IMG/VR virus record: IMGVR_UViG_3300048438_000153
Span: 211,103-275,102 of that record
Length of the DNA: 64,000 bases
Reading direction: 5' to 3' (one strand)
Translations under genes and position numbers: made by a program
Part shown: piece by piece, positions 6,748 through 62,315 of the stretch
Position numbering within the stretch: position 1 is the first letter of the stretch
Layout of the letters: each line of letters starts with the position of its first letter
Notes under the pieces: generated by a model
Told to the model about the DNA's origin: nothing
The model's database searches: none
Seen by the model: only the letters and a program-made list of their open reading frames with translations

Positions 6748-7683
6748 TTAAGAAACCATAAGACGGAGCAACCCCGTTTTGAACGCCGAAAACGGCGACA
6801 CAACTCCGCTAATTGCAAGGTTTTCGCAATGATAGAGGACACCTAAGATTTCTCTCAATTTTTTTGTAGTGAACCTACGCGCTCTAGGAACGAGCACATC
6901 ACCCACAAGCCAACTTTGAACGCCTATTTCTTCAGAGATACCTTGCACAGAAGTGACCCCTCTGTCGATACAAAGTCTTACCGATAAGAGCTGAACTATA
7001 TTCTTGTGAAGTAGACCCGCGACCAATCCCATCGTCGGGTCTTTGTCTCTGTTCTTCTCAAAGCGAGCGCAAGTTTTAAGAAAGTTAGTCGGATTCCATG
7101 AGATCACCGCATCAGTCAGAAGCACTCCATCCATTTCTTTCAAGGGCGCAATCACCGACAAGACCTCTATGGGAGTGACCTCACTCCCCTCAGCGACGTA
7201 GCCGATCTTCAGAGCCTCGTAGGTTAAGACTCCAACATCTTGACCTACTCGCTGAACCACACTCTCACAGATAGACAGACTGATCTGCTTCCCCTGATCC
7301 GCCACCATCTTCTGAAAGAACTTCGCATACCACTCCGCGAGCTTCTTCTTACTCTTAGGTATCTCGTAACAGTCTTTCTTTTTGACTCCCATGAGTGCTT
7401 TCGGCACTACGCGGTCTGCTAAATAGAGAACACCGAAGCCCTCTTTCTGAGGGATGTGTGCGAGGTTCTTTAACCCTGTCGGGTTCGAGATCACGATGAG
7501 CTTATCCACCACGTCAAAGAGTCCCAAATCAAAGGCTTCCTCGATCTCACTCTTAGAGGATTTCTTTCCATCTAGGTAGATCACCTCCCATCCGAGCGCA
7601 TAAGCATCGTTGATGATTTCTCTTGAAGCATGAAAGGCGAGGTCTTTGAACGTACCGTAGATGACTCTGTGTTCTTTCTTCAT
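6748..7683 (-). CDS. holA: DNA polymerase III delta subunit-like (clamp loader)
   Basis: LGLFDVVDKLIVI and VQRVGQDVGVLTYEALKI (delta-like); ~310 aa; adjacent to a delta'-like gene. Confidence 0.75.
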   Translation of the reverse strand: MKKEHRVIYGTFKDLAFHASREIINDAYALGWEVIYLDGKKSSKSEIEEAFDLGLFDVVDKLIVISNPTGLKNLAHIPQKEGFGVLYLADRVVPKALMGVKKKDCYEIPKSKKKLAEWYAKFFQKMVADQGKQISLSICESVVQRVGQDVGVLTYEALKIGYVAEGSEVTPIEVLSVIAPLKEMDGVLLTDAVISWNPTNFLKTCARFEKNRDKDPTMGLVAGLLHKNIVQLLSVRLCIDRGVTSVQGISEEIGVQSWLVGDVLVPRARRFTTKKLREILGVLYHCENLAISGVVSPFSAFKTGLLRLMVS

Positions 7684-8264
7684 TTGTGGACTCCTAGAAA
7701 GTATCCACTGAGGGCGGAGTGAGAAACCCTCTTCCTCGCTAAGAGTGACCTCAGCTCGTCTGTATACAAGTCGGTGTCCTCCTCTTTGATAAGGACTTCA
7801 AGATAGGCTTCCATAAATGCCCTCTCAGATCCCTTCTCCACCTTCGCAAGTACCTTGAGTCCTCTTAAGAGGTTATCTTCGCTCAGAGCGCCATACAGAG
7901 CCTCTGCGTCTTCATAGAGATCATGCTCCTGTCGGGGCGCGTAATGAAACTTCTCTCCACAGCGAGATCGGATAGTATTAGGAACGCCACCTAAGTCATT
8001 CGCCCATAGGAAAAGGGTTGGGCTGTTGGGCGTAGGCTCTTCGATGCGCTTAAGAAGAATATCAAGGGCTGACGGATCAGCCTCATCGAGTGGACCTGCT
8101 ACTAGACAGGGATTCTTATGGGGGTAAACCTGAGTGAAGAGGCTCATCAATAGCCTCACTCCGTCTACCTTCAGATTTGTGATCGGCTCATGAACAAGCT
8201 CATAGCCCTCTAGCTCTTCAGCGAGGCCGTTCTTAACGCCCCTTCCATGATGAATGAAAATCAT
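7680..8264 (-). CDS. holB: DNA polymerase III delta' subunit-like (short)
   Basis: ALDILLKRIEEP and PNTIRSRC motifs; likely start ATG 8264 after a GAGGAG RBS. Confidence 0.75.
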   Translation of the reverse strand: MIFIHHGRGVKNGLAEELEGYELVHEPITNLKVDGVRLLMSLFTQVYPHKNPCLVAGPLDEADPSALDILLKRIEEPTPNSPTLFLWANDLGGVPNTIRSRCGEKFHYAPRQEHDLYEDAEALYGALSEDNLLRGLKVLAKVEKGSERAFMEAYLEVLIKEEDTDLYTDELRSLLARKRVSHSALSGYFLGVHK

Positions 8265-8289
8265 GCTGTCTCCTCTCTTGTGACCCTTA

Positions 8290-8298
8290 CCTATATCA
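8290..8298 (-). promoter_or_regulatory. Putative extended -10 promoter (TGATATAGG) for holB-holA
   Basis: TGnTAT motif about 26 nt upstream of ATG 8264. Confidence 0.45.
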
Positions 8299-8384
8299 GA
8301 ACACCCATCAAGGTAAGAGATATCCATACAGGAGGTTATCTTAAGTTTCTGCTTGAACCTCGTCTCTGCCTCCGATATACAGGT

Positions 8385-8800
8385 TCACGATCTGACTCAA
8401 CAACGGTTTGAGTCTCATGGGCTCTTCCCTCCGACTAGCGAAACTGAGGATAATCTTATCCCGACTAAAAGGAGGCAACCCTACTGAGCTTGAGAAAGCT
8501 CTTAGGGCAGAAACCCTCATGTGACGTAAGTCACTCGGTTGAAAAGCGTACCGATGGATCTCAATCAGTAACGAGACTCGGCAACTACTCTCTCAGAGTA
8601 AGTACCCTGTAGGTTGGTCAACTCCGTTGATAGAACCTGATAAACAGTCTGCTCTTTCTCACTCCCTTGATAGTCTCTTGTGAGCCTCTAGGTTTATTCT
8701 TTCCCTTACCTAGTAGGTTGTCTCAGATAGAAACTATCTTAGTATCTCTCTTTAGTAGAGATAGGAAGTATAGTTACTCTTCTAAGAAGAATATGAATTA
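8385..8800 (+). ncRNA. Putative structured non-coding RNA, family unknown
   Basis: No ORF >=60 aa; a run of hairpins, including GAGA and GTAA GNRA tetraloops; G-U pairs favour the + strand. Confidence 0.5.
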
Positions 8801-8839
8801 GAAGTAAGTAACTAGAGAAGACTTAGTAAGTCCTCCTAA

Positions 8840-9045
8840 AAACCAAAAGAAAAACTACTCGTACTACTACAAGTACTCTTACTAATCCTCAACCAACTAC
8901 ACCTACAACTAATAGTCCTACTACTACAACAACACATACAGCTCATACTACAACAACTACTAGTCTTACTACATCTACAAGTAATACTACTCCAACTAGT
9001 ACAGCTACACATACATGAACAGATACTATAGATGAACATACACTA
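8840..9045. repeat. G-poor low-complexity CTA/CAA/ACA trinucleotide tract (candidate origin or unwinding element)
   Basis: ctactactacaacaac-type sequence; the Thr-rich + frame has no start codon and an internal TGA. Confidence 0.6.
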
Positions 9046-9189
9046 AAAAAAGAAAGAAGTAGGTTAAGAAAGAACCTACTTATAGAAACTACTTTAGAAA
9101 AAAAAGACTATAGATAAGAAAGTACCTATATAGGTGACTTATAGGCTCCTACCTAGTGGAAGCATGAAAGAACACTAGGGATAAGAATC

Positions 9190-9488
9190 ATGATCGACTT
9201 TTCAGAACAAAATCTAGATGATATGGACTTCGGAGGGATAGACCTATCAGGGTCTATCTTCAACACAAGCTCTCTTAAGAGGGCTAAGTTCATCGGAGGG
9301 ACTTACAGGGACAGCCTGTTTGAAGAACTTCAACCTGATGATCTAGAGGATAATGAGCTTTCCCCATCAGATTTTTCAGGAGCACTTTCGTGAGATTCTC
9401 GATTGCAGATGGGACGACCTTCTATAAGTGTGACTTCAAGTATGTCACGCTGACGCGCTGTATCCGAAACCGCGTCAAAGGGATCTGA
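9190..9488 (+). pseudogene. Pentapeptide-repeat protein broken by a 1-nt frameshift near 9380
   Basis: DFSEQNLDDMDFGGIDLSGSIF... continues in the -1 frame as STFVRFSIADGTTFYKCDFKYVTLTRCIRNRVKGI*, stopping 2 nt before the next ATG; total length 299 nt. Confidence 0.7.
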
Positions 9489-15502: not shown

Positions 15503-15958
15503 ATGTGGTTGACATACCTAATCTTATCTGTTTTTCTAACCACATTAGCCCACGAGTACAGTCATGTCGGTATGGCTCAACTCTTAGTAGGTGTAGATCA
15601 ATACTCCATCAAACCCTTCATCCATAAACACAAAGAATTAGGGCTTGTAGGAGGATCTGTCTCAATCACTTATAAGAGAGCAAGAACAAAGTCAGAAGAA
15701 GCTTGGATTGCCTTCGCCCCACGCCTCACTAATGCTCTCTTCTTAATACTCCTACCGTTCACTGTCGATAAAGGATCTCTAGTGATCATCTTAGTAGCTA
15801 CATTAGGATGCTACGATATGCTCAGGGGATCACTCCCCAATGACTCTGACTGTAAAGTCTATTGCAGTCATTGGAGGGTGAGTCCTTACCTAGTCAGGTA
15901 CTATCAGCTCACTCTTTCTTATGTGAGCTTCCTCACCTTTCTACTCAGGCTTTCTTAG
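15503..15958 (+). CDS. Membrane zinc metalloprotease-like protein (HExxH)
   Basis: LAHEYSH inside a hydrophobic segment, IAFAP, several TM stretches; GAGGAG RBS. Confidence 0.7.
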   Translation: MWLTYLILSVFLTTLAHEYSHVGMAQLLVGVDQYSIKPFIHKHKELGLVGGSVSITYKRARTKSEEAWIAFAPRLTNALFLILLPFTVDKGSLVIILVATLGCYDMLRGSLPNDSDCKVYCSHWRVSPYLVRYYQLTLSYVSFLTFLLRLS

Positions 15959-18900
15959 AGGATCACAAAGTTGATCGTGATCACACTGTCTGCGTTAATC
16001 TGAGAACCTATCCTGTTGACAAGGCTGAACTCGAAGCTCGTAGCGTTCGTGATCGAATGCGCGTATACCTCGATACCGCCCTCAGCGAGAATGTCTCCTC
16101 CATTATCAGCAGAGGCCACTGTAGCCATGATGACGCTTGTAGATAACACTGAAGTGTTATTGACCACAAATCCGATTGAGTGAGCATCATCTGCTATCGC
16201 GGTATCGGTTGTCACCGCGACTTGGAAAGCCTTAGTGTTGGTGCTAAAGAGAGGCGCGTTAGTCACGCCCTCGTCACCTGTAAGACCTGTAGTCTTAGCG
16301 ACTGTAAGACCACCGTTCTTGACATTCAAGCTACCTACGTCAAGGGGAGCGAGATCTGAGTCAGGAACGGAATAAGATGCAGCCGGCTCAGTTATGTCAG
16401 CTCGACCATGAAAAATCTTAAACGCGCCTGACTTACCGCCTACGGTGTTGTCTACCTCATATACGACACCCATAAGGAAGTCAGCAAAGTTAGAATCACC
16501 GTAAGCACCTACAAAACCGAGATCGCGAGTTGATGCTGTATTAGTGTAGCCCACATATAGGGTAGGGTCTTTGAATCTTAAAGACCCTGAAACCGCGCTG
16601 TTTCCTGTGATCACACCTGTGACATCAAGATCGCCCGAGAGAGTCACTTTCTGATCTGCTGTCAGAGTGATCGTAGTCTCTCCGTCTGAGTTCTGAATGA
16701 CGTTATTCCCAAGAATAAGGTTACTGCCTGTCTCTACCTCGCCCGTAAACGTAGCCTTGTTTGCAGAGCTAAGAGTCAGAACAGTTGAAAGAGCACCCGC
16801 ATTATCTCCACCTGTCTGAAAGATAACCGAACCGCCTGTGCCTGTCCCATTACCAACACCCGAGGAAATAGTGAGGTTCTCACCTACGGTGTCTTCGTCA
16901 GTCTGAGTAGTCACAGAAATAGAGGTCGCGTTGCTTCCATCACCTAGAGCTACACCTCCACCGCTAACAGTAAGACTGTTCGATGTGAGTGACCCTGTAG
17001 TTGAAAGGTTCTCATCTCCGAAAGAAATAACCCCCCCCGAGTCGGTAATAGAACCGTCAGCAAGAGTAAGAGTTCCAACAGATGAGCCTGAGACTCCCTC
17101 AGACACTTTCCCGAAGACTACTTTCTCACCTTCATTCGTGGTGACGAACTTGAGGTAAGAGTTAGCTCCCTCTGCGATGTCGAGAGCAGTCGCCTGAGCA
17201 TCCGTAAGACTGATAGAAATGGTATTTCCATCGGCGGAGATACTATCTAGGGAGATATCGCCTACGTTAGTGATGTCTCCATCAGCAACACTTAACGAGG
17301 TAACAGTGGTTGCGCCCGCTCCGAGAGTTCCCGTAGTTGAGAGGTTCTCATCTCCAAAGGAAATAGCTCCGCTTGAGTCAGTAATAGAGCCGTCAGCGAG
17401 AGTAAGAGTTCCAACTGTCGAGCCTGAGACTCCCTCAGAAACCTTTCCGAAGACTACCTTCTCACCAGCGTCAGTTGTTACGAACTTGAGGTAAGAGTTA
17501 ACACCCTCTGTGATATCAAGTGATGATGCTTGGTTATCAGTGAGGTTAAGGGTGATCGCGTTTCCGTCAGCAGAAATACTATCGAGAGCAATATCCCCTA
17601 CGTTAGTGATGTCCCCATCAGTAACACTTAACGAGGTAACAGTGGCAGACCCCGCCCCGAGAGTACCTGTAGTAGAAAGGTTCTCGTTCCCAAAGGAAAT
17701 CGCGCCCCCTGAGTCGGTGATCGACCCGTCAGCGAGAGTAAGAGTTCCAACTGTCGAGCCTGAGACTCCCTCAGAAACCTTCCCGAAGACTACCTTCTCA
17801 TCAGCGTCAGTGGTGACGAACTTGAGGTAAGAGTTAGCTCCCTCAGTAATGTCGAGTGAAGACGCTTGGTTATCAGTGAGGTTAAGGGTGATCGAGTTCC
17901 CGTCAGCAGAAATACTATCGAGAGCAATATCCCCTACGTTGCTGATGTCTCCATCAGCAACACTTAATGAAGTGACAGTGGTTGCGCCCGCCCCGAGAGT
18001 ACCTGTAGTAGAAAGGTTTTCGTCCCCAAAGGAAACAGCGCCCCCTGAGTCAGTAATCGAGCCATCAGCGAGAGTAAGAGTTCCAACAGACGATCCTGAG
18101 ACTCCCTCAGACACCTTCCCGAAAACTACCTTCTCATCAGCGTCTGTAGTTACGAACTTGAGGTAAGAGTTAGCTCCCTCAGTAATGTCGAGTGAAGACG
18201 CTTGGTTATCAGTGAGACTGATGGAAATGGTATTTCCGTCAGCAGAAATACTATCTAGGGCGATGTCCCCTACGTTGGAGATGTCCCCATCAGTAACACT
18301 TAATGAAGTGACAGTGGTAGCTCCCGCGCCGAGAGTACCTGTTGTCGAGAGGTTCTCGTCCCCGAAAGAAATAGCTCCACTTGAGTCAGTGATCGACCCA
18401 TCAGCAAGAGTAAGATCTCCAAAGGTAGATCCTGTTGCTCCCGAGACTGTGCCTGTAGCCTCAAGAGTGCTGACAAGTAAACCAGCCTTAGAAAGACCCA
18501 CAACACCTGAGAAGTCGGTAGTAGTTCCATTTACCGCACCGCTGTGAGTGCCTAGTAAGAATTTACCTTCACCCTCATCCCAAATGATAAGAGCATCGTC
18601 CTCAAGACCTCTATTCAGGAAGATCCCGATATCAGAGTTATTGTTATTATCCCCAATGTCCTTGTTGAGCTCAATCACTTGATCTGCAACAGAAAGGTTG
18701 GTTGTACTGATGATAGTCTGAGTGCCGTTTACGGTAATGTTCGTACAGGTGATAGAACCTGTAGTGGTCAGGTTCTCATCATCAAAAGTGATTGTCCCAC
18801 CTGTGGAGGTAATAGAACCGTCAGCGAGAGTAAGAGTCCCTACGGTAGACCCTGAAGCAAGTGTAGCCACCCCCGCTCCGAGAGTACCTGTGGTAGAAAG

Positions 18901-21369
18901 GTTCTCATCCCCGAAAGAAATCGAACCACCTGAGTCAGTGATCGAACCATCGGCAATAGTAAGAGTTCCAACAGACGATCCTGAGACTCCCTCAGAAACC
19001 TTCCCGAAGACTACCTTCTCATCAGCGTCAGTTGTTACGAACTTGAGGTAAGAGTTAGCTCCCTCAGTGATGTCGAGAGCAGTCGCCTGAGCATCTGTTA
19101 AAGAGATGGTGAGGGTGTCTCCATCGGCGGAGATACTATCGAGGGCGATATCCCCTACATTCGTGATGTCCCCATCAGTAACACTTAACGAGGTAACAGT
19201 GGTTGCGCCCGATCCGAGAGTTCCCGTAGTTGAGAGGTTCTCATCTCCAAAGGAAATCGCGCCCCCTGAGTCAGTAATCGAGCCATCAGCGAGAGTAAGA
19301 TTTCCAACAGACGATCCTGAGACTCCCTCAGAAACCTTCCCGAAGACTACCTTCTCATCAGCGTCAGTTGTTACGAACTTGAGGTAAGAGTTAACACCCT
19401 CAGTGATGTCGAGAGCCGTTGCTTGAGCATCCGTAAGACTGATAGAAATGGTATTCCCATCAGCAGAAATACTATCAAGGGCGACATCACCTACGTTAGT
19501 GATATTTCCGTCAGTAACACTTAATGAAGTGACAGTGGCAGACCCCACTCCGAGAGTTCCCGTAGTTGAGAGGTTCTCGTTCCCGAAAGAAATAGCTCCA
19601 CCTGAGTCAGTAATAGAGCCGTCAGCGAGAGTGAGAGTTCCTACGGTAGACCCTGAGACTCCCTCAGACACTTTCCCGAAGACTACCTTCTCACCTTCAT
19701 TCGTGGTGACGAAGTTAAGGTAAGAGTTACCCGCTTCTGTGATATTGAGCGCGGTAGCTTCGTTATCCGTCAAAGTGATGGTGAGGGCACTGCCGTCAGC
19801 AGAAATGCTGTCGAGGGCGATATCCCCTACGTTAGTGATATTTCCGTCAGTAACACTTAATGAAGTGACAGTGGTAGCCCCCGCGCCGAGAGTACCTGTT
19901 GTCGAGAGGTTCTCGTTCCCAAAGGAAATAGCGCCCCCTGAGTCGGTAATCGACCCGTCAGCGAGAGTAAGAGTTCCTACGGTAGATCCTGAAGCAAGTG
20001 TGGCTACCCCCGCGCCGAGAGTTCCCGTAGTTGAGAGGTTTTCGTTCCCGAAAGAAATAGCTCCACCTGAGTCAGTAATCGACCCGTCAGCGAGAGTAAG
20101 AGTTCCTACGGTAGACCCTGAGACTCCCTCAGAAACCTTTCCGAAGACCACTTTCTCACCTGCGTCAGTTGTTACGAACTTGAGGTAAGAGTTAACACCC
20201 TCAGTAATGTCGAGTGAAGACTCTTGGTTGTCTGTAAGGCTGATAGAAATGGCATTTCCGTCAGCAGAAATGCTATCTAGGGAGATATCGCCTACATTCG
20301 TGATATTTCCGTCAGTAACACTTAATGAAGTGACAGTGGTTGCTCCAGCTCCGAGAGTACCTGAAGTTGAGAGGTTCTCATCCCCGAAAGAAATCGAACC
20401 GCCTGAGTCAGTAATCGAGCCATCAGCGAGAGTAAGAGTTCCAACTGTCGAGCCTGAAGCAAGTGTAGCCACACCCGCTCCGAGAGTTCCCGTAGTTGAG
20501 AGGTTCTCATCCCCGAAAGAAATCGCCCCACCTGAGTCAGTGATCGACCCGTCAGCGAGAGTAAGAGTCCCTACGGCAGACCCTGAGACACTCTCAAATA
20601 CTTTCCCGAAGACCACTTTCTCACCCTCGTCAGTTGTTACGAACTTGAGGTAAGAGTTAGCTCCCTCAGTAATGTCAAGAGACGACGCTTGATTGTCCGT
20701 AAGACTAATAGAAATGGTGTTGTTATCGGCGGAGATACTATCTAGGGCGATGTCCCCCACGTTAGTGATGTTTCCTTCGTTAACATTAAGAGATCCAAGA
20801 GAGAGAGTCCCTGATGTAAAGTCAGCGTTCCAAGAGTTGTCATTCTCGGTCACGTCAGCAGTACCTAGAGCGAAATAGTTGTTCTCTTCATCGAAATAGA
20901 AAACGCCAGGGTTCTGAGCCCCACCACCCTCTCCATCAGTCTGAAGTGGTCGTGTGAAGATGATGCCGATGGAGTCTCCGTTTGTTCCATTCGCATCGTG
21001 GGCGTTACCCTCACTCCCATCAGCCAAGACGATAACTCTATCCTGAACGAGAAGATCATTCGTAGTATTCTGAGTGGTTACGTTAAGTGTCCCAGGAATA
21101 GAAATGATCGAGTTGGCTTGACCTAATGTGATCGTGTTGGCTCCAAGAGTAGGACCAATCACGATTGATCCTGTCACCCCTATGTTTGAGGTGATTGAAG
21201 CATTGTTAGACATATCGGCGCGAAGAAGGTCTGCGCCTCCCGCATCTGCGCCGTTGTGGACGCGGATAGACTCAGTAGTGGTATCTACCGTGACCTCACC
21301 GATTGCGCCCGTAAAGGCATTGTTCTCAGCAGTAGTGCCTCTGCGTAATTGTACTCTTCTTACAGCCAT
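15955..21369 (-). CDS. Tail fibre/adhesin with an Mtd_N-like N-terminus and 112-aa tandem repeats
   Basis: VQLRRGTTAENNAFTGAIGEVTVDTT N-terminus; nine copies of the YL(K/N)FVTT...TLADGSITDSGG unit. Confidence 0.85.
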   Translation of the reverse strand: MAVRRVQLRRGTTAENNAFTGAIGEVTVDTTTESIRVHNGADAGGADLLRADMSNNASITSNIGVTGSIVIGPTLGANTITLGQANSIISIPGTLNVTTQNTTNDLLVQDRVIVLADGSEGNAHDANGTNGDSIGIIFTRPLQTDGEGGGAQNPGVFYFDEENNYFALGTADVTENDNSWNADFTSGTLSLGSLNVNEGNITNVGDIALDSISADNNTISISLTDNQASSLDITEGANSYLKFVTTDEGEKVVFGKVFESVSGSAVGTLTLADGSITDSGGAISFGDENLSTTGTLGAGVATLASGSTVGTLTLADGSITDSGGSISFGDENLSTSGTLGAGATTVTSLSVTDGNITNVGDISLDSISADGNAISISLTDNQESSLDITEGVNSYLKFVTTDAGEKVVFGKVSEGVSGSTVGTLTLADGSITDSGGAISFGNENLSTTGTLGAGVATLASGSTVGTLTLADGSITDSGGAISFGNENLSTTGTLGAGATTVTSLSVTDGNITNVGDIALDSISADGSALTITLTDNEATALNITEAGNSYLNFVTTNEGEKVVFGKVSEGVSGSTVGTLTLADGSITDSGGAISFGNENLSTTGTLGVGSATVTSLSVTDGNITNVGDVALDSISADGNTISISLTDAQATALDITEGVNSYLKFVTTDADEKVVFGKVSEGVSGSSVGNLTLADGSITDSGGAISFGDENLSTTGTLGSGATTVTSLSVTDGDITNVGDIALDSISADGDTLTISLTDAQATALDITEGANSYLKFVTTDADEKVVFGKVSEGVSGSSVGTLTIADGSITDSGGSISFGDENLSTTGTLGAGVATLASGSTVGTLTLADGSITSTGGTITFDDENLTTTGSITCTNITVNGTQTIISTTNLSVADQVIELNKDIGDNNNNSDIGIFLNRGLEDDALIIWDEGEGKFLLGTHSGAVNGTTTDFSGVVGLSKAGLLVSTLEATGTVSGATGSTFGDLTLADGSITDSSGAISFGDENLSTTGTLGAGATTVTSLSVTDGDISNVGDIALDSISADGNTISISLTDNQASSLDITEGANSYLKFVTTDADEKVVFGKVSEGVSGSSVGTLTLADGSITDSGGAVSFGDENLSTTGTLGAGATTVTSLSVADGDISNVGDIALDSISADGNSITLNLTDNQASSLDITEGANSYLKFVTTDADEKVVFGKVSEGVSGSTVGTLTLADGSITDSGGAISFGNENLSTTGTLGAGSATVTSLSVTDGDITNVGDIALDSISADGNAITLNLTDNQASSLDITEGVNSYLKFVTTDAGEKVVFGKVSEGVSGSTVGTLTLADGSITDSSGAISFGDENLSTTGTLGAGATTVTSLSVADGDITNVGDISLDSISADGNTISISLTDAQATALDIAEGANSYLKFVTTNEGEKVVFGKVSEGVSGSSVGTLTLADGSITDSGGVISFGDENLSTTGSLTSNSLTVSGGGVALGDGSNATSISVTTQTDEDTVGENLTISSGVGNGTGTGGSVIFQTGGDNAGALSTVLTLSSANKATFTGEVETGSNLILGNNVIQNSDGETTITLTADQKVTLSGDLDVTGVITGNSAVSGSLRFKDPTLYVGYTNTASTRDLGFVGAYGDSNFADFLMGVVYEVDNTVGGKSGAFKIFHGRADITEPAASYSVPDSDLAPLDVGSLNVKNGGLTVAKTTGLTGDEGVTNAPLFSTNTKAFQVAVTTDTAIADDAHSIGFVVNNTSVLSTSVIMATVASADNGGDILAEGGIEVYAHSITNATSFEFSLVNRIGSQINADSVITINFVIL
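16980..20780 (-). repeat. Nine coding repeats with a 336-bp core unit and optional 129-bp insert
   Basis: Equivalent positions at 17158, 17494, 17830, 18166, 19051, 19387, 19723, 20188, 20653 (spacings 336, 336, 336, 885, 336, 336, 465, 465). Confidence 0.9.
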
Positions 21370-21430: not shown

Positions 21431-24400
21431 CTAAACCACTAAGACCCCGTAGTCGTCAGCGCAGTAGAGTACCGTGTCAGCCACCGAGCCGAAATCAATG
21501 TTAAAGTCACCCTCCCCGAAAGCGTCGGCTACCGAGCCGTAGTCGATGACTTCCATGACTCGACCATAGATTACGAGGTCGCCTCCAACGAGAGCGTTCG
21601 GGTTCAGAGAAATACTCTGAGACGTAATCACAGGACTCTCGTTAACGTCTGTACCTATAGTTGGAACAGTACCCGGCTCAAATCTACTGTTGTTGGCGTT
21701 GTAGACAAGACCCTGACCATCGGCCAAATCAGTCAAGTCAACATCGGAGTGCGTTTCAACTGAGCCCAAGACGGTAAGATTTGAGCCATCTAACGCCCCT
21801 AACTTACCTTCTCCATCTGTAACAACCGCCTTGCCGTTCTCACCACCTCCGCCATTAATAGTAGTGTCGAGTGTAGAAGCAGAGCCGAGTCCTAAGTTGC
21901 CTCTCGCTACCGCTTCATTTCCCCCATCAGAAATCTCAGAAAGACTGTTGCCGACCTGAAGCAAGTCTGAAATGTCTGTAGTCGCTGTTGAAGTAAGACC
22001 GAGAGTAGACCTAGCTGTCGCGGAATCCGCGTCATCCAAAAGTGTTCTCGCAAAGGCTGTTACATCAGCCTCAGCCCAAGTATCTACTCCTGTAGTATAT
22101 ATGAGCTTATCAGCGCCCGTCCCGAGATCAGAAATAGCACTCAAGGTGGCGTCAAAAGCTTGGACGTCAGTGTCGATCTCTAACCCAAGAGTAGTTCGAG
22201 CCGTCGCTGAGTCAGCGTCATCTAAGAGTGTCCTAGAGAAAGCAGAAAGGGTGGCTTCAGCCCAAGTATCTACTCCCGTAGTATATATGAGCTTGTTAGC
22301 GCCTGTCCCGAGATCAGAAATACTCTGAAGAGTAGCATCGTAGGCTTGGACGTCAGTGTCGATCTCTAACCCAAGAGTAGTTCGAGCCGTCGCTGAGTTA
22401 GCGTCATCTAAGAGAGATCTAGCGAACGCCGTAAAGATGGTGATTGAGAAAGTATCTACGCCACTTGCATAAATGAGTCTATCAGCGCCCGTATTAACAC
22501 CAGCTAAAGCTTGTAATGTAGCATCATAAGCCTGAACATCAGAGCCGATCTCAACACCTAAGTTACCCCTCGCATTCGCGACGTTATCTAAGTCATTAAG
22601 ATTATTAGCTGACTGAAGAAGATTGCCAATGTCTGTTGTGGCTGTCGAAGTGAGGCCGAGGGTAGTTCTCGCTGTGTTAGCATCAGCATCGTCTAAGAGT
22701 GTTCTAGAGAAAGCAGAAAGGGTGGCCTCAGCCCAAGTGTCTACTCCCGTAGTGTAAGCGAGCTTATCAGCCCCCGTTCCGAGCGCGGAGAGAGAAGCTA
22801 ACGTCGCATCGTAGGCTTGAATATCAGTGTCGATCTCTAACCCAAGAGTAGTTCGAGCGGTCGCTGAGTTAGCATCGTCTAAGAGTGTCCTAGAGAAAGC
22901 AGAAAGGGTGGCTTCAGCCCAAGTGTCTACTCCCGTAGTATATATGAGCTTATCAGCTCCCGTCCCGAGATCAGAAATAGCACTCAAGGTGGCGTCAAAA
23001 GCTTGAACGTCAGACCCGATAGCGACACCGAGATTAGCCCTCGCATTCGCGACGTTATCTAAGTCATTAAGATTGTTAGCTGACAGAAGAAGATCAGCGA
23101 GGTCTGTTGTCGCAGTAGGGGTAAGACCGAGGGTCGCTCTAGCATCTGCTGAGTTAGCGTCATCTAAGATTGTTCTAGCGAAAGCAGAAAGAGTTGCTTC
23201 AGCCCAAGTATCCAATCCCGTAGTATATATGAGCTTATCAGCTCCCGTTCCGAGATCAGAAATAGCACTCAAGGTGCTGTCGAGAGGCTGATAAGTGTTT
23301 GCGAGATCCAAGTCTGTGATCTCTGCTTGAACATAAGCAGTAGTGGCGACGAGAGTTGAATCATCACCGAGATCAGGGCTTTCCACTCTTAATGGAGAAA
23401 GAGTCAGGTTGGCGTCATTAAACTCTGTGGCGGTGTGGGCATCAGTGGTCGTGCCTAGCTTGAACGTGTCTGTGCTCTCGTCAAAAAAGAACACCGCGTC
23501 ATTTCCCGTAGTCCCACGCTCGAAGAAAAGACCGATGTCATTGGGGTTAGCTCCGCCATCAACGCCTTTATTAAGTCTGACAATCGTATCTTCTACATCT
23601 AGTGTAGAAGTGTTGACTGTTGTCGTGTCGCCCTGAACTTGAAGATCACCACTTACGATAACCTTCGACCCAACACCTCCGAGCGTTAAGACTGAAGGGT
23701 TGCCATTATTGGTAGTCATCGTCGCGCCGATTGTTGCATCTGCGTTGGTGAAGTCGATTCCTGTCATGCCACTAAGAGTTGTGGAAGCCCCTCCCAAAGA
23801 AATGGATGTTGAACCTACAGTCAAAGAGCTGTTCGCGAGCTTATCGTTCGTGACGTCTCCATCAACAATCTTAGCAGTCGTAACAGAGTCGGCATCGAGC
23901 TTCGCCTCAGTGACGTTCCCATCTACGATTTTAGCCGTAGTAACGGAGTCAGCGTCGAGCTTCGCTTCAGTGATGTTGCCGTTCAAAATCTTAGCGGTGG
24001 TTACAGCATCGTTACTTATGGTAGCCAAGCCCTCGTTGGAGATAGAAACATCACCCGAGAGAGATACGTTCTTCCATTGATTGTCGTCCGCACCCCCATC
24101 GGAGTCGTAGACGATAATCTGAGCGTCTGCGACGTCGGCGAGGAGGACATCGTTGAGGTCATCGAGGCTAGAGACGTTGCCTGCTGCTTGCATGACGTCA
24201 TTGACCCACTCAGTAGTCGCTACTGTAGTGTCATCAGAGGCGAGGTCAGGAGTTGCTGAAGTAAGAGTACCCACCTCAAAGTTATATGCGAAAGCCCCGA
24301 AAGTAGTAGCTCTTGTGGTGAGCGCGATGCTTGCGTTGTCTGAGAGGTTAGACGTAGAAATCGTCTGATTCGCAAAACCACCATTTCCTGTACTCACTAA

Positions 24401-26929
24401 GAAATGGTTAGCGTTGACGAGTTCATCTCCATCCAAAGACACATCAGAAAGAGCGTCGATCCTCGCAGTGCTTCTCAAGAAGTTCTCTACTCCAAGCTGA
24501 ATGCTGACCTTCTCGAAAGAATCAGCTCCATTACCTAAGAGTAAATCACCGTCAGCGATCCCTGTAATGGTATCGAGAGAAGCATCTTTGGCTTGGTATG
24601 TGTTGGCGAGGTCGAGCGCAGTTATGTCTGCATCAATCGCGTCATCTACGTATTTCTTAGTGGAGGCGTGGGCATCAAGAGTAGGATCTTGGACACTGAC
24701 AGTAGAAAGCGTGAAATCGTAAGCGAAAGCCCCGAAGGTAGCTCCCACGCTCGTCTGAACTACATTACCTGTGTTAGAGAGGTCGCCGAAAGAAAGAATG
24801 CTGTTCTCAAAGGTTGAGTCATCCGCTCCGATTCTTAGGACCTGACCCTCGGCCTTCACACCGATTGTAGTGTCAGAAAGATTGTCTGAAGCTCCCACGC
24901 TCTTGAGGAAAGACTCTACGCCCTCTGTGACACTGACCTTCTCGAAAGAGTCAACGCCATTACCTAAGAGTAAATCACCGTCAGCGATCCCTGTGATGCC
25001 ATCAAGAGAAGCATCTTTAGCTTGATACGTATTGGCGAGGTCGAGCGCAGTTATGTCTGTGTCAATCTGAGCGTCTACATAGGCCGTAGTAGCGAGCTTC
25101 GTTGAGTTGTCGCTTGCGTTCTGAGTGGTAGCCGTAGCGTTCGCGCCTGTAAGGTCTACATCAGCAGTAAAGGTGTTATTCGCGGAGAAAGTCTGAACGG
25201 CATTGAGCCGAGCGACATTAGCGGTGTCTGTGAGGTCTGTAGAAGCAATGCTCACTGTCGCTGTGACTGTGCCGTCATTCACCCCCTCTGTGTCGTCATA
25301 AGAGAAAGTGATCCCTGTGTTACCCACGTTGTTTGCGGTGAACATTGGGCCGACTATATCTTGGACTTGCTCATCAGAAAGCTGAGTATCCGTATCTGTT
25401 TCGTCAGCGACCTCGAAAGACCCATTGTTATACTTAAGAATCTTTCCGTCAACGACACCTACGAGATCGACATCAGAAAGATCACCAGCAGAGAACCCCC
25501 CAAGACTTACAGTTGCGTCTATCGTGTCTGCGTTATCGTTAGGGGAGAAAGAAACACCTGTGTGAGCTCCACCTTGTAGAGCTGTGCCAACAGCGTCCCT
25601 TGCCATTTCGTCTGTGTAAGTCTGAGTAGGAGCTGTAAACTCAAATCGGTTGTTCCCCGCCACCCAAGCGAGGACGTTTCCGTCTTGAATGTTCGCAATC
25701 GAGTTGACGTCAGAAAGATCAGAGATGGAAGCACCTGAAGCGAGAAAGTCCCCTACATTACTCTGAGAAGCAGTGCCAAGAGCGAGCGCGAGGATGTCTG
25801 TGTCAATCTGAGCGTCTACATAAGCAGTGGTGGCGAGTTTCGTTGAGTTGTCGCTTGCGTTCTGAGTGGTGGCTAATACTGTTCCTGTGAAAGTCTGATT
25901 GGCGCTGAGGAGAGCGACATCTCCTGTCCCTGACAGCTCAGAGAAATCAAGATCTTCGTTAATCCAAGCGCCGTTCTCGTACTTCAAGACTTGGCTATTA
26001 GCGAGCCCCACTCCGCCAAGTGTGACGTTAGAAAGGTTTCCGATCTCAGCGTCAGTGCTTAAGAAAGACTCTAAGTCAGCACTGATGTTGATGACGCCAA
26101 AAGTGTCGTTTCCTGTAGCGATGATCAGGTCATTGTCTACAGGAGCGAGCGCGGATAAACCTGTCAAAGTCGCGTCGAGAGACTGTTTTGTAGCCACCTC
26201 GTCATCAACGTATTTCTTAGTCGATGCGTGGGCATCAAGAGTAGGATCTTGAACACTCACTGTAGAAAGAGTGAAGTCGTAAGCGAAAGCGCCGAAAGTA
26301 GACCCTGAGCTAGTCAAGACAACATCGGCGGAGTCTGAAAGCTCGGATGTTGATATCGTCTGATTCGCGAAGTTGTTTCCGTCAAAAACAAGGAACTCAT
26401 TGAGCGCGGGGTTCGCGACAGAAGCATCTCCGAGATCATTCAGATTAGCTGCGCCACCACCGCCACCTTGACCTGGTACCCACTGACCCACGTTCGCATC
26501 ATAGACTAAGGCGTTTCCGTCAACTAGACCTACTAGATTTACGTCAGAAATCAAGCTCAGAGTAAGGGTCGCGTTTTCCCATTTCCCAGCTCCCACGTTG
26601 TACTGAAGAAACTGATCATCAGCGAGTCCCGCTATCGTCACGTCAGATAGCTGAGCGAGTTGAGCGTTCCCCCCTAAGACTGCGTTTCCTACAACATCTT
26701 GGACGAACTCTGTGGTGGCGATGCGACCTGAACTCTCATTAAGTGGGATGCCACCTAAGATACTTAAAGTCCAATCACCTCCTGACCCTAGAATATAGCC
26801 TGATTGGTTGATGGAGGGTCCGGGTACAAGCCCGTCAGTACCCGCTTGCGCTCCATCTGTTCCTGTGAAAGCGGTCAAAACAATCGAAGAACCGCCCGTT
26901 GTGGTCGTGCCTGTGCCGAAAGAACTCAT
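21431..26929 (-). CDS. Long tail fibre/structural protein with several repeat types
   Basis: ATTAYVD, LSDLSDV and TLLDDA..ATARTTLGL fibre motifs; likely start ATG 26929 after AAGGAG. Confidence 0.85.
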   Translation of the reverse strand: MSSFGTGTTTTGGSSIVLTAFTGTDGAQAGTDGLVPGPSINQSGYILGSGGDWTLSILGGIPLNESSGRIATTEFVQDVVGNAVLGGNAQLAQLSDVTIAGLADDQFLQYNVGAGKWENATLTLSLISDVNLVGLVDGNALVYDANVGQWVPGQGGGGGAANLNDLGDASVANPALNEFLVFDGNNFANQTISTSELSDSADVVLTSSGSTFGAFAYDFTLSTVSVQDPTLDAHASTKKYVDDEVATKQSLDATLTGLSALAPVDNDLIIATGNDTFGVINISADLESFLSTDAEIGNLSNVTLGGVGLANSQVLKYENGAWINEDLDFSELSGTGDVALLSANQTFTGTVLATTQNASDNSTKLATTAYVDAQIDTDILALALGTASQSNVGDFLASGASISDLSDVNSIANIQDGNVLAWVAGNNRFEFTAPTQTYTDEMARDAVGTALQGGAHTGVSFSPNDNADTIDATVSLGGFSAGDLSDVDLVGVVDGKILKYNNGSFEVADETDTDTQLSDEQVQDIVGPMFTANNVGNTGITFSYDDTEGVNDGTVTATVSIASTDLTDTANVARLNAVQTFSANNTFTADVDLTGANATATTQNASDNSTKLATTAYVDAQIDTDITALDLANTYQAKDASLDGITGIADGDLLLGNGVDSFEKVSVTEGVESFLKSVGASDNLSDTTIGVKAEGQVLRIGADDSTFENSILSFGDLSNTGNVVQTSVGATFGAFAYDFTLSTVSVQDPTLDAHASTKKYVDDAIDADITALDLANTYQAKDASLDTITGIADGDLLLGNGADSFEKVSIQLGVENFLRSTARIDALSDVSLDGDELVNANHFLVSTGNGGFANQTISTSNLSDNASIALTTRATTFGAFAYNFEVGTLTSATPDLASDDTTVATTEWVNDVMQAAGNVSSLDDLNDVLLADVADAQIIVYDSDGGADDNQWKNVSLSGDVSISNEGLATISNDAVTTAKILNGNITEAKLDADSVTTAKIVDGNVTEAKLDADSVTTAKIVDGDVTNDKLANSSLTVGSTSISLGGASTTLSGMTGIDFTNADATIGATMTTNNGNPSVLTLGGVGSKVIVSGDLQVQGDTTTVNTSTLDVEDTIVRLNKGVDGGANPNDIGLFFERGTTGNDAVFFFDESTDTFKLGTTTDAHTATEFNDANLTLSPLRVESPDLGDDSTLVATTAYVQAEITDLDLANTYQPLDSTLSAISDLGTGADKLIYTTGLDTWAEATLSAFARTILDDANSADARATLGLTPTATTDLADLLLSANNLNDLDNVANARANLGVAIGSDVQAFDATLSAISDLGTGADKLIYTTGVDTWAEATLSAFSRTLLDDANSATARTTLGLEIDTDIQAYDATLASLSALGTGADKLAYTTGVDTWAEATLSAFSRTLLDDADANTARTTLGLTSTATTDIGNLLQSANNLNDLDNVANARGNLGVEIGSDVQAYDATLQALAGVNTGADRLIYASGVDTFSITIFTAFARSLLDDANSATARTTLGLEIDTDVQAYDATLQSISDLGTGANKLIYTTGVDTWAEATLSAFSRTLLDDADSATARTTLGLEIDTDVQAFDATLSAISDLGTGADKLIYTTGVDTWAEADVTAFARTLLDDADSATARSTLGLTSTATTDISDLLQVGNSLSEISDGGNEAVARGNLGLGSASTLDTTINGGGGENGKAVVTDGEGKLGALDGSNLTVLGSVETHSDVDLTDLADGQGLVYNANNSRFEPGTVPTIGTDVNESPVITSQSISLNPNALVGGDLVIYGRVMEVIDYGSVADAFGEGDFNIDFGSVADTVLYCADDYGVLVV
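21990..23290 (-). repeat. About six copies of a ~62-aa coding repeat (DATLSAISDLGTGADKLIYTTGVDTWAEATLSAFSRTLLDDA...)
   Basis: Visible in both protein and DNA (186-bp spacing at 22201/22387). Confidence 0.85.
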
Positions 26930-26938
26930 ATCGAACTC

Positions 26939-26984
26939 CTTTATATGTCTCTCTTCTTTCTCCAAGAGACATATAAAGACTTAA
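26939..26984 (-). promoter_or_regulatory. 14-bp perfect hairpin overlapping a near-consensus late promoter and the RBS of the fibre gene
   Basis: CTTTATATGTCTCT (26939-26952) / AGAGACATATAAAG (26965-26978); TTAAGTCTTTAT at 26973-26984. Confidence 0.7.
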
Positions 26985-55691: not shown

Positions 55692-55714
55692 CTTTACCTC
55701 CTTCTAACACATAT

Positions 55715-55745
55715 CCCAAACCCGATACCTCACCAATACCTCAAC
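55715..55745 (-). promoter_or_regulatory. Early-region repeated motif, copy 1 (GAGGTATTGGTGAGG...GGTTTGGG)
   Basis: One of five intergenic copies. Confidence 0.7.
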
Positions 55746-55747
55746 TC

Positions 55748-62242: not shown

Positions 62243-62270
62243 ACCCTCTTATGAGCGCGCCTGTTTAATC

Positions 62271-62315
62271 GTTACTCTTAGTTACCCAACTCTGTCACCT
62301 CACCAATACCTCAAC
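62271..62315 (-). promoter_or_regulatory. Early-region repeated motif, copy 4
   Basis: GTTGAGGTATTGGTGAGGTGACAGAGTTGGGTAACTAAGAGTAAC. Confidence 0.7.

What the first reader, a model, noticed from the sequence alone, without database searches (positions are those of the whole stretch)
8820..9180. G-poor CTA/CAA trinucleotide tract resembling an expanded DnaA-trio array: candidate replication origin
Seen: ~200 bp of ctactactacaacaac-type sequence with extreme strand skew. It is followed by A-tracts and palindromes (AGTAGGTT/AACCTACT near 9057-9079, ACCTATATAGGT near 9124-9135, CCTAGTG/CACTAGG near 9152-9179) and lies between divergent gene blocks. Established: bacterial oriC unwinding regions contain DnaA-trios (5'-TAG-3' repeats, complement CTA), and some DnaG primases start at CTA. 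No TTATCCACA box is present here. Inference: an ssDNA-binding or priming platform for a phage initiator, possibly forming an RNA-plus-unwinding-element origin together with the upstream structured RNA.
Basis: partly seen in the sequence, partly recalled or inferred. Interest (0 to 1): 0.7.

Follow-up and report, generated by a model that had tools for sequence, protein, structure and literature searches.

The report
Non-coding G-free tail of phage RNA
The flagged stretch is a real, strictly three-base-periodic, almost G-free non-coding tract that always sits just downstream of a previously undescribed structured RNA in a clade of marine jumbo phages; it is not a DnaA-trio array and not a Thr-rich gene, and its most likely job is to keep a stretch of transcript single-stranded and untranslated, for example so that transcription can be ended there.

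Summary
Observation confirmed. Window 8854-9015 is the most G-depleted stretch of a 275-kb marine jumbo-phage contig, and it lies in the contig's lowest-GC 400 bp. It keeps a strict (A-C-W)n register.

It is not coding. There is no start codon. In-phase stops occur at exactly the chance rate (33 observed, 33.1 expected in 974 codons from 14 lineages). Third positions are 96-100% A/T, against 49% in real genes.

The same kind of tract occurs in at least 17 related phage lineages. It follows a covarying, two-domain structured RNA of about 440 nt that has no Rfam match. That RNA has a conserved sigma70-like promoter, and its closing helix ends about 10-30 nt before the tract. Tract sequence turns over fast. 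Length changes between anchors that bracket only the periodic part are all multiples of three.

DnaA-trio membership fails: no DnaA box, no phage DnaA. An apparent skew switch nearby is an artefact of two giant genes.

Best reading (about 0.33): an unstructured, untranslatable 3' extension of the RNA's transcription unit. It would act as a Rho-type loading and termination zone where this transcript converges on the opposite operon. A DNA-level unwinding or filament-loading role is not excluded (about 0.17). The 3-nt register is unexplained.

The parts
8353..8381 (+). Candidate sigma70-type promoter of the structured RNA: TTGAAC (8353-8358), 17-nt spacer, TATACA (8376-8381)
   Evidence: Both hexamers are conserved in the alignment of relatives (columns 14-46). 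They lie directly upstream of the first conserved helix. This is inferred from sequence and was not picked up by the strict scan.
8388..8835 (+). Novel two-domain structured RNA of about 440 nt, with no Rfam family
   Evidence: 33 of 69 predicted pairs show compensatory changes in 8 sequences. With 14 sequences, helices are 88-100% paired. 14 of 17 four-base loops are GNRA on the + strand and none on the - strand. There is no Rfam match. A 202-nt metatranscriptome contig covers 8417-8618 only. The genome holds one copy. The strand is not proven, because the mirror fold scores as well.
8646..8656 (+). 5' strand of the long-range helix that closes RNA domain 2 (AGTCTGCTCTT)
   Evidence: It pairs with 8814-8823. 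Compensatory changes occur in L009 (C:G to U:A) and L008 (G:C to C:G).
8814..8835 (+). 3' strand of the closing helices (AGAGAAGACT and following bases); end of the structured RNA, about 10-30 nt before the tract
   Evidence: The outer 4-bp helix shows covariation at all four pairs.
8836..8853 (+). CCUCC-containing, A-rich linker between the RNA and the tract
   Evidence: CTCC(T/C)(A/T)A followed by an A-run is conserved in the alignment. Non-3n length changes (for example 7 nt between L009 and L014) occur here and not in the tract.
8854..9015 (+). G-depleted, triplet-periodic (A-C-W)n tract: the finding itself
   Evidence: The best 78-nt window has C/G = 13.5. RNA MFE is -13.7 kcal/mol over 176 nt, against -45.0 +/- 8.2 for genome windows. 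The stop-to-stop frame 8830-9018 has no ATG, GTG or TTG. The same kind of tract is found in at least 17 relatives.
9011..9044 (+). Two 17-nt direct repeats (A-A/G-ATGAACA type) at the 3' edge of the tract
   Evidence: family D7. Analogous 15-nt repeats occur three times in L003 and four times in L013. Their sequences are not conserved between clades.
9045..9081 (-). Leftward-facing intrinsic-terminator-like hairpin (9081-9057) followed by a T-run (9056-9045); the loop holds the conserved TAAGAAAGA motif
   Evidence: MFE -9 kcal/mol, z = -2.6. Equivalent leftward hairpins with different stems lie at the same place in L007 and L008.
9124..9179 (.). Palindrome ACCTATATAGGT (9124-9135) and hairpin CCTAGTG...CACTAGG (9152-9179), just before the ATG at 9190
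   Evidence: Read from the sequence. The second hairpin is conserved in L007 and overlaps the ribosome-binding site of the pentapeptide-repeat gene.
9190..9488 (+). Truncated and frameshifted remnant of a pentapeptide-repeat gene (context, variable cargo)
   Evidence: Weak pentapeptide Pfam hits. Intact homologues of 335-339 aa exist in L007 and L008. The gene downstream of the tract differs or is absent in other relatives.
7680..8264 (-). Clamp-loader delta' gene, the syntenic anchor of the module in all relatives
   Evidence: Pfam DNA_pol3_delta2. 55 homologues, mostly 194 aa.

Best explanation
The tract is non-coding. It is the downstream (3') extension of the transcription unit of a novel, roughly 440-nt structured phage RNA that is read rightward from a host-type promoter.

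Proposed mechanism. Its composition is almost no G, one C per triplet and A/T elsewhere. That gives a nascent RNA of about 160-190 nt that cannot fold, has no start codon and no Shine-Dalgarno sequence, and is strongly C>G. These are the properties of a Rho-utilisation (rut) site. Rho, or an equivalent single-strand-dependent factor, would load there and end the RNA's transcript before it runs into the converging leftward operon. That operon's own transcripts are stopped by the leftward hairpin/T-run terminators just to the right. Exonucleases would then trim the tail back to the closing helix, leaving the stable structured core.

What is shown: non-coding status; coupling to the RNA; conservation of composition and register; lack of structure; the convergent layout.

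What is inferred: the promoter, the strand, and the action of Rho.

What this model does not explain: the 3-nt register. In-register slippage accounts for the 3n length changes but not for the A/T-only third position.
For: Non-coding.
- The Thr phase has no ATG, GTG or TTG in the window, L007, L012 and L014; other relatives have only internal or late ones.
- The Thr phase carries in-phase TAA in L007, L022, L024, L010 and L011.
- The TGA of the window is TGG in L022.
- In-phase stops are 33 observed against 33.1 expected in 974 codons of 14 lineages.
- W3 is 96-100%, against 0.49 in 78,212 real codons, whose longest W3 run is 15.

Coupling to the RNA.
- The closing helix, with compensatory changes, ends about 10-30 nt before the tract.
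- The module of RNA plus tract is found beside delta' in 15 lineages, and the tract also follows a second structured region in L010, L011 and L049.
- The + strand is favoured by 14 of 17 GNRA loops and by the conserved promoter-like hexamers.

rut-like properties (criteria from PMC6407284).
- The best 78-nt C/G ratio is 3.5-22 in all 17 loci, with MFE 0 to -6 kcal/mol. The window value of 13.5 is at the genome's 99.99th percentile.
- The tract RNA is 3.8 SD less structured than genome windows.
- No rightward intrinsic terminator follows the RNA, whereas leftward ones do.
- In L009, L012-L014, L019 and L034 the RNA converges on the opposite-strand genes.

Transcript evidence. The only metatranscriptome contig in 5 kb covers the RNA core and not the tail or the neighbouring genes.
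Against: - The strict 3-nt register and the exclusion of C as well as G from position 3 are not expected for a rut site. The tract is A-rich (41-47%) rather than C-rich (20-31%), and C follows A more often than a pyrimidine (YC count 2-18 per 78 nt).
- The periodic order does not reduce folding below shuffles (z = -1.6).
- A strict chain of six C's spaced 11-13 nt apart was found in only 6 of 17 loci.
- The RNA strand is not proven. The mirror fold has as many compensatory pairs. If the RNA is read leftward, the tract is a C-poor, GU-rich leader and Rho loading is excluded.
- The host, and whether it has Rho, is unknown.
- The RNA evidence is one low-depth contig without strand information.
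- Being the lowest-GC spot of the genome fits a DNA-level role as well.
Confidence: 0.33

Rival explanations
1. DNA-level element: the tract and its AT-rich flanks form the unwinding zone of a phage replication or recombination initiation site. The structure-free + strand, or the GT-rich - strand, would serve as a platform for a protein that binds single-stranded DNA in 3-nt steps (an AAA+ initiator or loader, RecA/UvsX, or primase). Transcription from the RNA promoter might activate or prime it, as in ColE1 RNA II or T4 oriF/oriG.
For: - It is the lowest-GC 200 bp and 400 bp of the 275-kb genome and has the most extreme strand asymmetry.
- The only known non-coding 3-nt-register element in bacteria is an ssDNA initiator site, the DnaA-trio (PMC8287927).
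- Clamp-loader, RNR, UvrD, RecA and SbcC-like genes lie in the window.
- A promoter-driven structured RNA runs into it, which is the layout of R-loop origins (PMC4412123).
- Short direct repeats sit at its 3' edge in several relatives.
- A distant relative has an iteron-like array at the same position.
- The phage encodes a DnaG-type primase and a RecA homologue.
Against: - No DnaA box and no phage DnaA.
- No robust skew switch. The 220-227 kb switch is produced by two giant genes and vanishes without them.
- The robust switch and the helicase, primase and polymerase genes are about 130-140 kb away.
- The rightward transcript would be G-poor, the opposite of what favours persistent R-loops.
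- The repeats are not conserved, and tract sequence is hypervariable.
Confidence: 0.17
2. RNA-level landing pad or decoy: the single-stranded (ACW)n tail, tethered to a stable structured domain, binds or soaks up a host or phage factor. Candidates are an oligomeric RNA-binding protein with a 3-nt step, ribosomal protein S1 with the 30S subunit, or an ACA/UAC-specific MazF-type endoribonuclease of an abortive-infection system.
For: - It is unstructured, repetitive and G-free.
- It is dense in ACA, ACU and UAC, the G-free motif types cut by MazF-family toxins (own knowledge).
- The register is conserved while the sequence is not, as expected for a multivalent low-specificity site.
- It is always attached to the RNA.
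Against: - No partner has been identified.
- The tail was not seen in the one RNA contig.
- It does not fit the Hfq ARN motif, because position 2 is C, and it has no CsrA GGA motif (read from the sequence).
- A cleavable decoy is a poor inhibitor.
Confidence: 0.12
3. The module is read leftward: the structured region is a long 5' leader of the delta'-delta-RNR operon, and the tract is its GU-rich, C-poor 5' part, which would be immune to Rho.
For: - The mirror fold has 89 pairs, 47 of them with compensatory changes, and 95% of cells paired.
- The common helices do not discriminate between G.U and A.C (15 against 13).
- The module is always directly upstream of delta'.
Against: - 14 of 17 four-base loops are GNRA on the + strand and none on the - strand, and they vary only at the N and R positions.
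- Conserved promoter-like hexamers face rightward.
- Leftward terminators lie upstream of the tract in that reading.
- Many minus-only helices fall in gappy alignment columns.
Confidence: 0.1
4. A self-perpetuating trinucleotide microsatellite with no function of its own, tolerated in a long non-coding gap.
For: - Turnover is fast and proceeds by tandem duplications of 3n units: a 12-nt duplication and an AAG unit in L024, 15-nt units in L003 and L013, and TRF periods of 24 and 18.
- All length differences are multiples of 3, as in-register slippage predicts.
- There is no protection from stops.
Against: - A tract of this type and orientation persists at the same position in lineages whose delta' proteins are only 53-58% identical.
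- G is excluded, and G/C at position 3 is nearly absent, although positions 1 and 2 vary by 27-35%. This implies selection.
- No comparable tract exists elsewhere in the 275 kb.
Confidence: 0.1
5. Unstructured translational leader (an omega/(CAA)n-like enhancer or standby site) for whatever open reading frame lies downstream.
For: - An ATG follows the tract closely in L003, L039, L009, L019 and L034.
- G-free CA-rich leaders enhance translation (own knowledge: TMV omega).
Against: - There is no downstream co-oriented gene in L012 and L013, and only a broken small ORF in L014.
- In the window about 170 nt with terminator-like hairpins separate the tract from the ATG at 9190.
- The downstream genes are unrelated to each other.
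Confidence: 0.06
6. A Thr/Ser/Asn-rich micro-protein or leader peptide (thrL-like) is translated from the tract; or a Cys/Ser-rich 67-aa peptide is made from the minus strand (9039-8836).
For: - An open stop-to-stop frame of 62 codons is present.
- The minus-strand ORF has an ATG.
- The T/S/N-rich composition recurs in relatives.
Against: - The window's Thr-phase frame has no start codon, and neither do those of several relatives. In-phase TAA or TGA occurs in at least 6 lineages, with the register continuing beyond them.
- Stops are at chance frequency.
- Codon usage is incompatible with the phage's genes.
- Substitutions among close relatives are non-synonymous.
- There is no Shine-Dalgarno sequence before the minus-strand ATG.
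Confidence: 0.03

Closest known systems
DnaA-trio array of the bacterial oriC basal unwinding system (BUS)
   Same: It is a non-coding repeat in a 3-nt register with one G per triplet on one strand. The + strand CTA equals the 3'-GAT-5' consensus. The tract lies in easily melted DNA.
   Different: - BUS needs a DnaA box within 16 bp or less and a conserved middle adenine (PMC8287927).
- Here there is no box and no phage DnaA.
- The middle base is A in only about half of the triplets.
- The array has about 55 units rather than 3 to about 10.
- It is not at a robust skew switch.
Rho-utilisation (rut) sites of Rho-dependent terminators, e.g. lambda tR1
   Same: It is an untranslated, unstructured, G-poor, C>G RNA of at least 78 nt downstream of a non-coding transcript (criteria in PMC6407284; met).
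   Different: - It is about twice the needed length, A-rich rather than C-rich, and has few YC dimers.
- It has a strict triplet register and A/T-only third positions, which no rut site is known to have.
- Rho dependence has not been tested.
RNA-primed or R-loop origins (ColE1 RNA II; T4 oriF/oriG)
   Same: A promoter drives a transcript, structured in ColE1, into an AT-rich unwinding element (PMC4412123).
   Different: - The transcript here would be G-poor, whereas persistent hybrids favour G-rich RNA.
- There is no evidence of initiation here.
- The helicase, primase and polymerase genes and the robust skew switch are elsewhere.
Large structured non-coding RNAs of phages and prophages (GOLLD, ROOL and similar)
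   Same: The upstream partner is a large, multi-helix, GNRA-rich RNA of unknown function carried by phages.
   Different: No Rfam 15 family matches, even at E = 10. To my knowledge none of those families is described with a periodic G-free tail.
thr operon leader peptide (thrL) and other attenuation leaders
   Same: It has a run of Thr codons upstream of other genes.
   Different: It has no start codon, stops at chance frequency, no regulated biosynthetic operon, and 55 codons rather than about 20.
(CAA)n / TMV omega unstructured leaders
   Same: It is a G-free, CA-rich, structure-free RNA.
   Different: Those are leaders in eukaryotic and plant-virus systems placed directly before an ORF. Here no conserved ORF follows.

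Membership tests
DnaA-trio / BUS origin element | A DnaA box (at most 2 mismatches) within 16 bp or less of the first trio | tested here: not met
   Matches with up to 2 mismatches are at chance level in the window (170 against 142 +/- 13). Only isolated 2-mismatch hits occur at 8883, 9109 and 9176, with no exact or 1-mismatch box flanking the tract. Definition.
DnaA-trio / BUS origin element | At least 3 consecutive NAN trios with a conserved middle adenine (consensus 3'-GAT-5') | tested here: inconclusive
   The pattern is met trivially. On the minus strand the middle base is A where + position 3 is T, which is about half of the triplets. The position is always A/T (W3 0.96-1.00). The tract has runs of 5-6 such trios but also many GTT-type units.
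DnaA-trio / BUS origin element | A DnaA initiator is available and the site lies at the replication origin | tested here: not met
   There is no Bac_DnaA in the phage contig, which is 88% complete. No robust skew switch lies at the locus. The host's DnaA cannot be tested.
Rho-dependent terminator (rut site) | At least 78 nt of RNA with C/G > 1 | tested here: met
   The best 78-nt C/G ratio is 13.5 in the window and 3.5-22 in all 17 loci. The genome's 99.9th percentile is 5.6.
Rho-dependent terminator (rut site) | Unstructured and ribosome-free | tested here: met
   MFE is -13.7 kcal/mol over 176 nt, against a genome mean of -45.0 +/- 8.2. There is no start codon or SD sequence, and stops occur at chance rate.
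Rho-dependent terminator (rut site) | Regularly spaced C (every 11-13 nt) and YC dimers | tested here: inconclusive
   A strict chain of six C's is found in 6 of 17 loci. The YC count is 2-18 per 78 nt, and C mostly follows A.
Rho-dependent terminator (rut site) | Termination depends on Rho | not testable with these tools
   The host is unknown. This needs bicyclomycin or rho-mutant assays, or in vitro transcription.
R-loop / RNA-primed origin (ColE1, T4 oriF/G) | A promoter followed by an AT-rich DNA unwinding element | tested here: met
   Conserved promoter-like hexamers lie at 8353-8381. The region is the lowest-GC segment of the genome.
R-loop / RNA-primed origin (ColE1, T4 oriF/G) | The transcript forms a persistent hybrid, favoured by G-rich RNA on a C-rich template | tested here: not met
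   The rightward transcript has about 4% G. Rule as stated in PMC4412123.
R-loop / RNA-primed origin (ColE1, T4 oriF/G) | Replication starts there | not testable with these tools
   Only assembler contigs with flat depth were available. Skew gives no robust support.
Protein-coding small ORF / leader peptide | Start codon, stop avoidance, the genome's codon usage, and purifying selection | tested here: not met
DGR template repeat / retron msd | A reverse transcriptase nearby and a second (variable) copy | tested here: not met
   There is no RVT_1 in the contig. The tract has a single match in the genome.
Any Rfam 15 RNA family (for the upstream RNA and the tract) | A covariance-model match | tested here: not met
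   No gathering-score hits in 64 kb. Only one chance-level hit, E = 8.4, in 8200-9300.
Iteron-type origin | At least 3 conserved direct repeats that bind an initiator | tested here: inconclusive
   The window has 2 x 17 nt, L003 has 3 x 15 nt, and L013 has 4 x 15 nt. Their sequences differ between clades, and no initiator gene was identified.

The most novel reading that the evidence does not exclude
The structured RNA and the triplet-phased, G-free tract together form a new kind of phage element. In it, a reader with a 3-nt step would be loaded next to, or by, a dedicated structured RNA. This would be DnaA-trio logic without DnaA, for example an RNA-coupled replication or recombination initiation site of marine jumbo phages.

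The register is kept by selection rather than by translation: G or C occupies only 0-4% of third positions, and all length changes between anchors that bracket only the periodic part are multiples of three. That is what this reading explains and the ordinary readings do not.
Probability: 0.12. Interest if true: 0.85.

Novelty: new variant of a known kind. Interest (0 to 1): 0.58.

Why it matters
- If the ordinary reading holds, this documents a new, widespread structured RNA family of marine jumbo phages. It also shows an unusually pure natural 'unstructured, untranslatable' RNA module that insulates converging transcription. That is useful for annotating huge-phage genomes and as a natural design for structure-free spacers.
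- The strict 3-nt register, kept without translation, is rare. The only established non-coding precedent is the DnaA-trio.
- If a 3-nt-step reader acts here, it would reveal a new way in which phages start replication or recombination, or control an RNA.
- Either way, the locus is a well-defined target: about 800 bp with a promoter, an RNA, a tail and terminators, testable in a reporter plasmid.

Tried and rejected
1. Thr-rich peptide. Rejected: no start codon, in-phase stops at chance frequency, and foreign codon usage. The minus-strand Cys/Ser ORF has no SD sequence and the same composition artefact.
2. DnaA-trio/BUS. Rejected: no box and no phage DnaA.
3. Origin by skew.
   - Raw cumulative skew follows gene orientation.
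   - A model of orientation plus replication direction on GC3 skew put a switch at 220-227 kb. The bootstrap mode was 220 kb and the permutation p was about 0.02.
   - That switch is produced by two adjacent giant genes with extreme skew. It disappears when they are removed or genes are weighted equally, leaving only a switch at about 80 kb.
   - AT3 skew gives different breakpoints. I therefore do not count skew as support.
4. DGR or retron. Rejected: no reverse transcriptase and no second copy.
5. Periodic C as a structure breaker. The tract folds slightly better than its dinucleotide shuffles (z = -1.6), so the register does not minimise structure.
6. Known RNA families: none match. tRNA and tmRNA: none found.
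7. Phage database. No DNA match. Only one distant protein match, to an uncultured 485-kb phage.
8. Conserved small ORF after the tract. It is plausible only in the L009 clade. Differences are spread over codon positions, and the ORF is broken in L014 and absent in the window.
9. The 102-aa neighbour as a partner protein. It has no family hit, and it is not conserved in the L010 clade.
10. More RNA evidence. Only one metatranscriptome holds the RNA, as a single 202-nt contig without strand information.
11. Strand of the RNA from covariation alone: undecided.
12. An exhaustive folding scan of the genome timed out and was replaced by 1,500 random windows.
Full report
**Where it is.** The window is the last 64 kb of a 275,102-bp linear IMG/VR virus contig that is 88% complete. 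GC content is 47.5%. Near-identical DNA occurs in many seawater metagenomes. The contig encodes a clamp loader (tau-like, delta, delta'), RNR, RecA, UvrD and an SbcC-like ATPase in the window. Elsewhere it encodes a DnaB-like helicase, a DnaG-type primase and a family-A polymerase. It is a marine jumbo phage with no close cultured relative.

**The observation.**
- GC skew reaches -0.78.
- The G fraction falls to 0.033 per 120 nt, the most G-poor stretch in the genome.
- All internal repeat spacings are multiples of three.
- In one phase the 'codons' follow A1 (0.73), C2 (0.65), W3 (0.96).
- The core is 8854-9015, and a weaker A/T-every-third-base pattern runs on to about 9123.
- Window 8725-9140 is the lowest-GC 400 bp of the whole genome, at 31.2% against 36.5% for the next lowest.
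- The first palindrome, with its preceding A-run, reads as a hairpin plus T-run terminator on the minus strand.

**It is not a gene.**
- The + strand 'Thr' frame is open from 8830 to 9018 but holds no ATG, GTG or TTG.
- The phage's real genes have 49% A/T at third positions, 36% ACC+ACG among Thr codons, and a longest run of 15 A/T-ending codons in 78,212 codons. The tract has more than 50 in a row.
- In relatives the same phase carries in-phase TAA (L007, L022, L024, L010, L011) with the register continuing beyond it. The window's terminal TGA is TGG in L022.
- Over 974 in-phase codons from 14 lineages there are 33 stops, against 33.1 expected from position-wise shuffles. The phase is therefore not protected from stops at all.
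- The minus-strand 67-codon Cys/Ser ORF is the mirror of the same composition and has no ribosome-binding site.

**What it belongs to.** I used the neighbouring delta' protein to fetch relatives: 55 protein clusters with identity from 96% down to 44% (loci). A DNA-pattern scan of metagenomes added more. Every relative with delta' identity of about 53% or more has an uncalled gap of 530-890 bp beside delta'.
- In 15 lineages the gap holds a conserved region of about 440 nt that folds into two domains.
- 33 of 69 predicted pairs show compensatory changes in 8 sequences. With 14 sequences, helices are 88-100% paired.
- Two hairpin loops vary only within GNRA. 14 of 17 four-base loops are GNRA on the + strand and none on the - strand.
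- TTGAAC-N17-TATACA lies just upstream and is conserved.
- No Rfam family matches, and the genome has a single copy.
- A long-range helix (8646-8656 with 8814-8823, plus an outer 4-bp helix) closes the second domain. It has compensatory changes in L009 and L008.
- It ends about 10-30 nt before the tract, after a CCUCC/A-rich linker.
- In L010, L011 and L049 a different or highly diverged structured region takes the same place, and the tract is again present.
- In a rRNA-depleted seawater metatranscriptome, the only contig within 5 kb maps to 8417-8618, inside the RNA core.
- Caveat: the mirror (minus-strand) fold scores as well by covariation alone. The + strand assignment therefore rests on the GNRA loops and the promoter-like hexamers.

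**How the tract evolves.** Its sequence is hardly alignable between clades, yet composition and register are kept.
- Distances between anchors that bracket only the periodic tract differ by 63, 6, 3, 9, 99, 93, 6, 9, 51, 9 and 12 nt. All are multiples of three.
- Anchor pairs whose interval also takes in the A-rich linker differ by 7, 23 and 32 nt, and the flank beyond the tract by 1 nt.
- A 99%-identical population variant carries 16-nt and 7-nt insertions just right of the tract.
- L024 shows a fresh 12-nt duplication and an extra AAG unit.
- In-register slippage explains the 3n rule. It does not explain why G or C almost never occupies the third position while positions 1 and 2 vary by 27-35%. 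I leave this as unexplained.

- A DnaA-trio array is defined by a DnaA box, a spacer of at most 16 bp, and NAN trios with a conserved middle A (PMC8287927).
- There is no box and no phage DnaA. The middle base is A in only about half of the units.
- Raw skew shows nothing at the locus.
- A model separating gene orientation from replication direction first placed a GC3-skew switch at 220-227 kb.
- Gene-by-gene inspection showed that it comes from two adjacent giant genes with extreme codon skew.
- Without them, or with genes weighted equally, only a switch near 80 kb remains, beside the helicase, primase and polymerase genes.
- I therefore give the origin idea no credit from skew.
- What remains for a DNA-level role: the lowest GC in the genome, the strand asymmetry, the 3-nt register, short non-conserved direct repeats, and an iteron-like array at the same position in a distant relative.

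**Most likely mechanism.**
- The layout is a rightward RNA gene that converges on the leftward SNF2-102aa operon in several relatives.
- Leftward-facing intrinsic terminators lie just right of the tract in three lineages, and no rightward one follows the RNA.
- The tract has every compositional property used to recognise Rho-utilisation sites (PMC6407284): at least 78 nt, C/G of 3.5-22 in all 17 loci, essentially no structure (3.8 SD below genome windows), and no possibility of translation start.
- I therefore propose that it keeps the nascent transcript naked so that Rho, or another single-strand-dependent factor, ends transcription. The tail is then trimmed to the closing helix.
- Weaknesses: it is A-rich rather than C-rich, has few YC dimers, has an unexplained register, the strand is unproven, and the host is unknown. 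Confidence is about one third.

**Novelty.** The RNA is a new family. The tail is a new variant of an unstructured terminator or spacer region if the ordinary reading is right. The reading that a 3-nt-step reader acts here, next to a dedicated RNA, is not excluded (about 0.12) and would be a new mechanism.

Noticed in passing
window 8388-8835 (+): A roughly 440-nt, two-domain structured RNA with GNRA loops and a long-range closing helix. It is conserved beside delta' in 15 phage lineages, has no Rfam match, occurs once in the genome, and is the only part of a 5-kb stretch seen in one seawater metatranscriptome. The strand is not fully settled.
   Followed up: partly
whole genome G000; e.g. window 9050-9075, 9113-9120: The hexamer AGAAAG/CTTTCT occurs 1,296 times against 148 expected (8.8-fold), on both strands and inside genes in both orientations. 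The 11-mer TTAAGAAAGAA occurs 32 times, against about 0.1 by my own estimate for equal base frequencies. The cause is unknown.
   Followed up: partly
window 9190-9488 (+): The pentapeptide-repeat ORFs 9190-9393 and 9390-9488 are a truncated, frameshifted remnant of a 335-339-aa gene that is intact in relatives L007 and L008.
   Followed up: partly
window 8264-8327 (-): The delta' ORF as listed (215 aa from 8327) is probably 194 aa starting at the ATG at 8264, as in most of its 55 homologues. A GAGGAG Shine-Dalgarno sequence precedes that ATG.
   Followed up: partly
L007:5128-7585; L009:5162-6826: The RNR large-subunit gene carries a LAGLIDADG insertion in L007 (894 aa, against 574 aa here). 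In L009 it is split into two ORFs.
   Followed up: no
L009:2714-2842(-), L019, L034, L014 (right after the tract): A 37-42-aa Lys/Glu-rich ORF (MQVKKEL...) starts at the end of the tract in the L009 clade. It is frameshifted by an 11-nt deletion in L014 and absent in the window. Evidence that it is coding is weak.
   Followed up: partly
L050:1-474: A distant relative (delta' 45% identical) has at least 8 copies of a 19-nt AAGATTTATAGA-type repeat and AGATCATCTAGA palindromes beside delta', where the RNA and tract sit in the other phages. The contig ends there.
   Followed up: partly
window 15955-21369 and 21431-26965 (-): Two adjacent giant ORFs (1804 and 1844 aa). The first has an Mtd_N (DGR tropism determinant N-terminal) domain and tail-fibre-like domains. 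Both have extreme coding-strand C3>G3 skew (about -0.29). No reverse transcriptase is present in the contig.
   Followed up: partly
genome G000 about 77-82 kb (outside the window): The only robust orientation-corrected GC3-skew switch lies here, next to the DnaB-like helicase (87.5 kb), DnaG zinc-ribbon primase (89.4 kb) and family-A polymerase (97.3 kb). It is a candidate origin or terminus.
   Followed up: partly
window 55633-55794, 59623-59760, 62214-63163 (+): Further G-poor stretches on the + strand near the end of the contig, mostly under listed minus-strand ORFs. GC skew is -0.25 over the last 5 kb.
   Followed up: no
L010, L011, L049 (between tract and next gene): Two or three strong 10-11-bp hairpins of the type ATCTCTCT-loop-AGAGAGAT follow the tract in this clade. 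Their role (processing sites, terminators or protein sites) is unknown.
   Followed up: no
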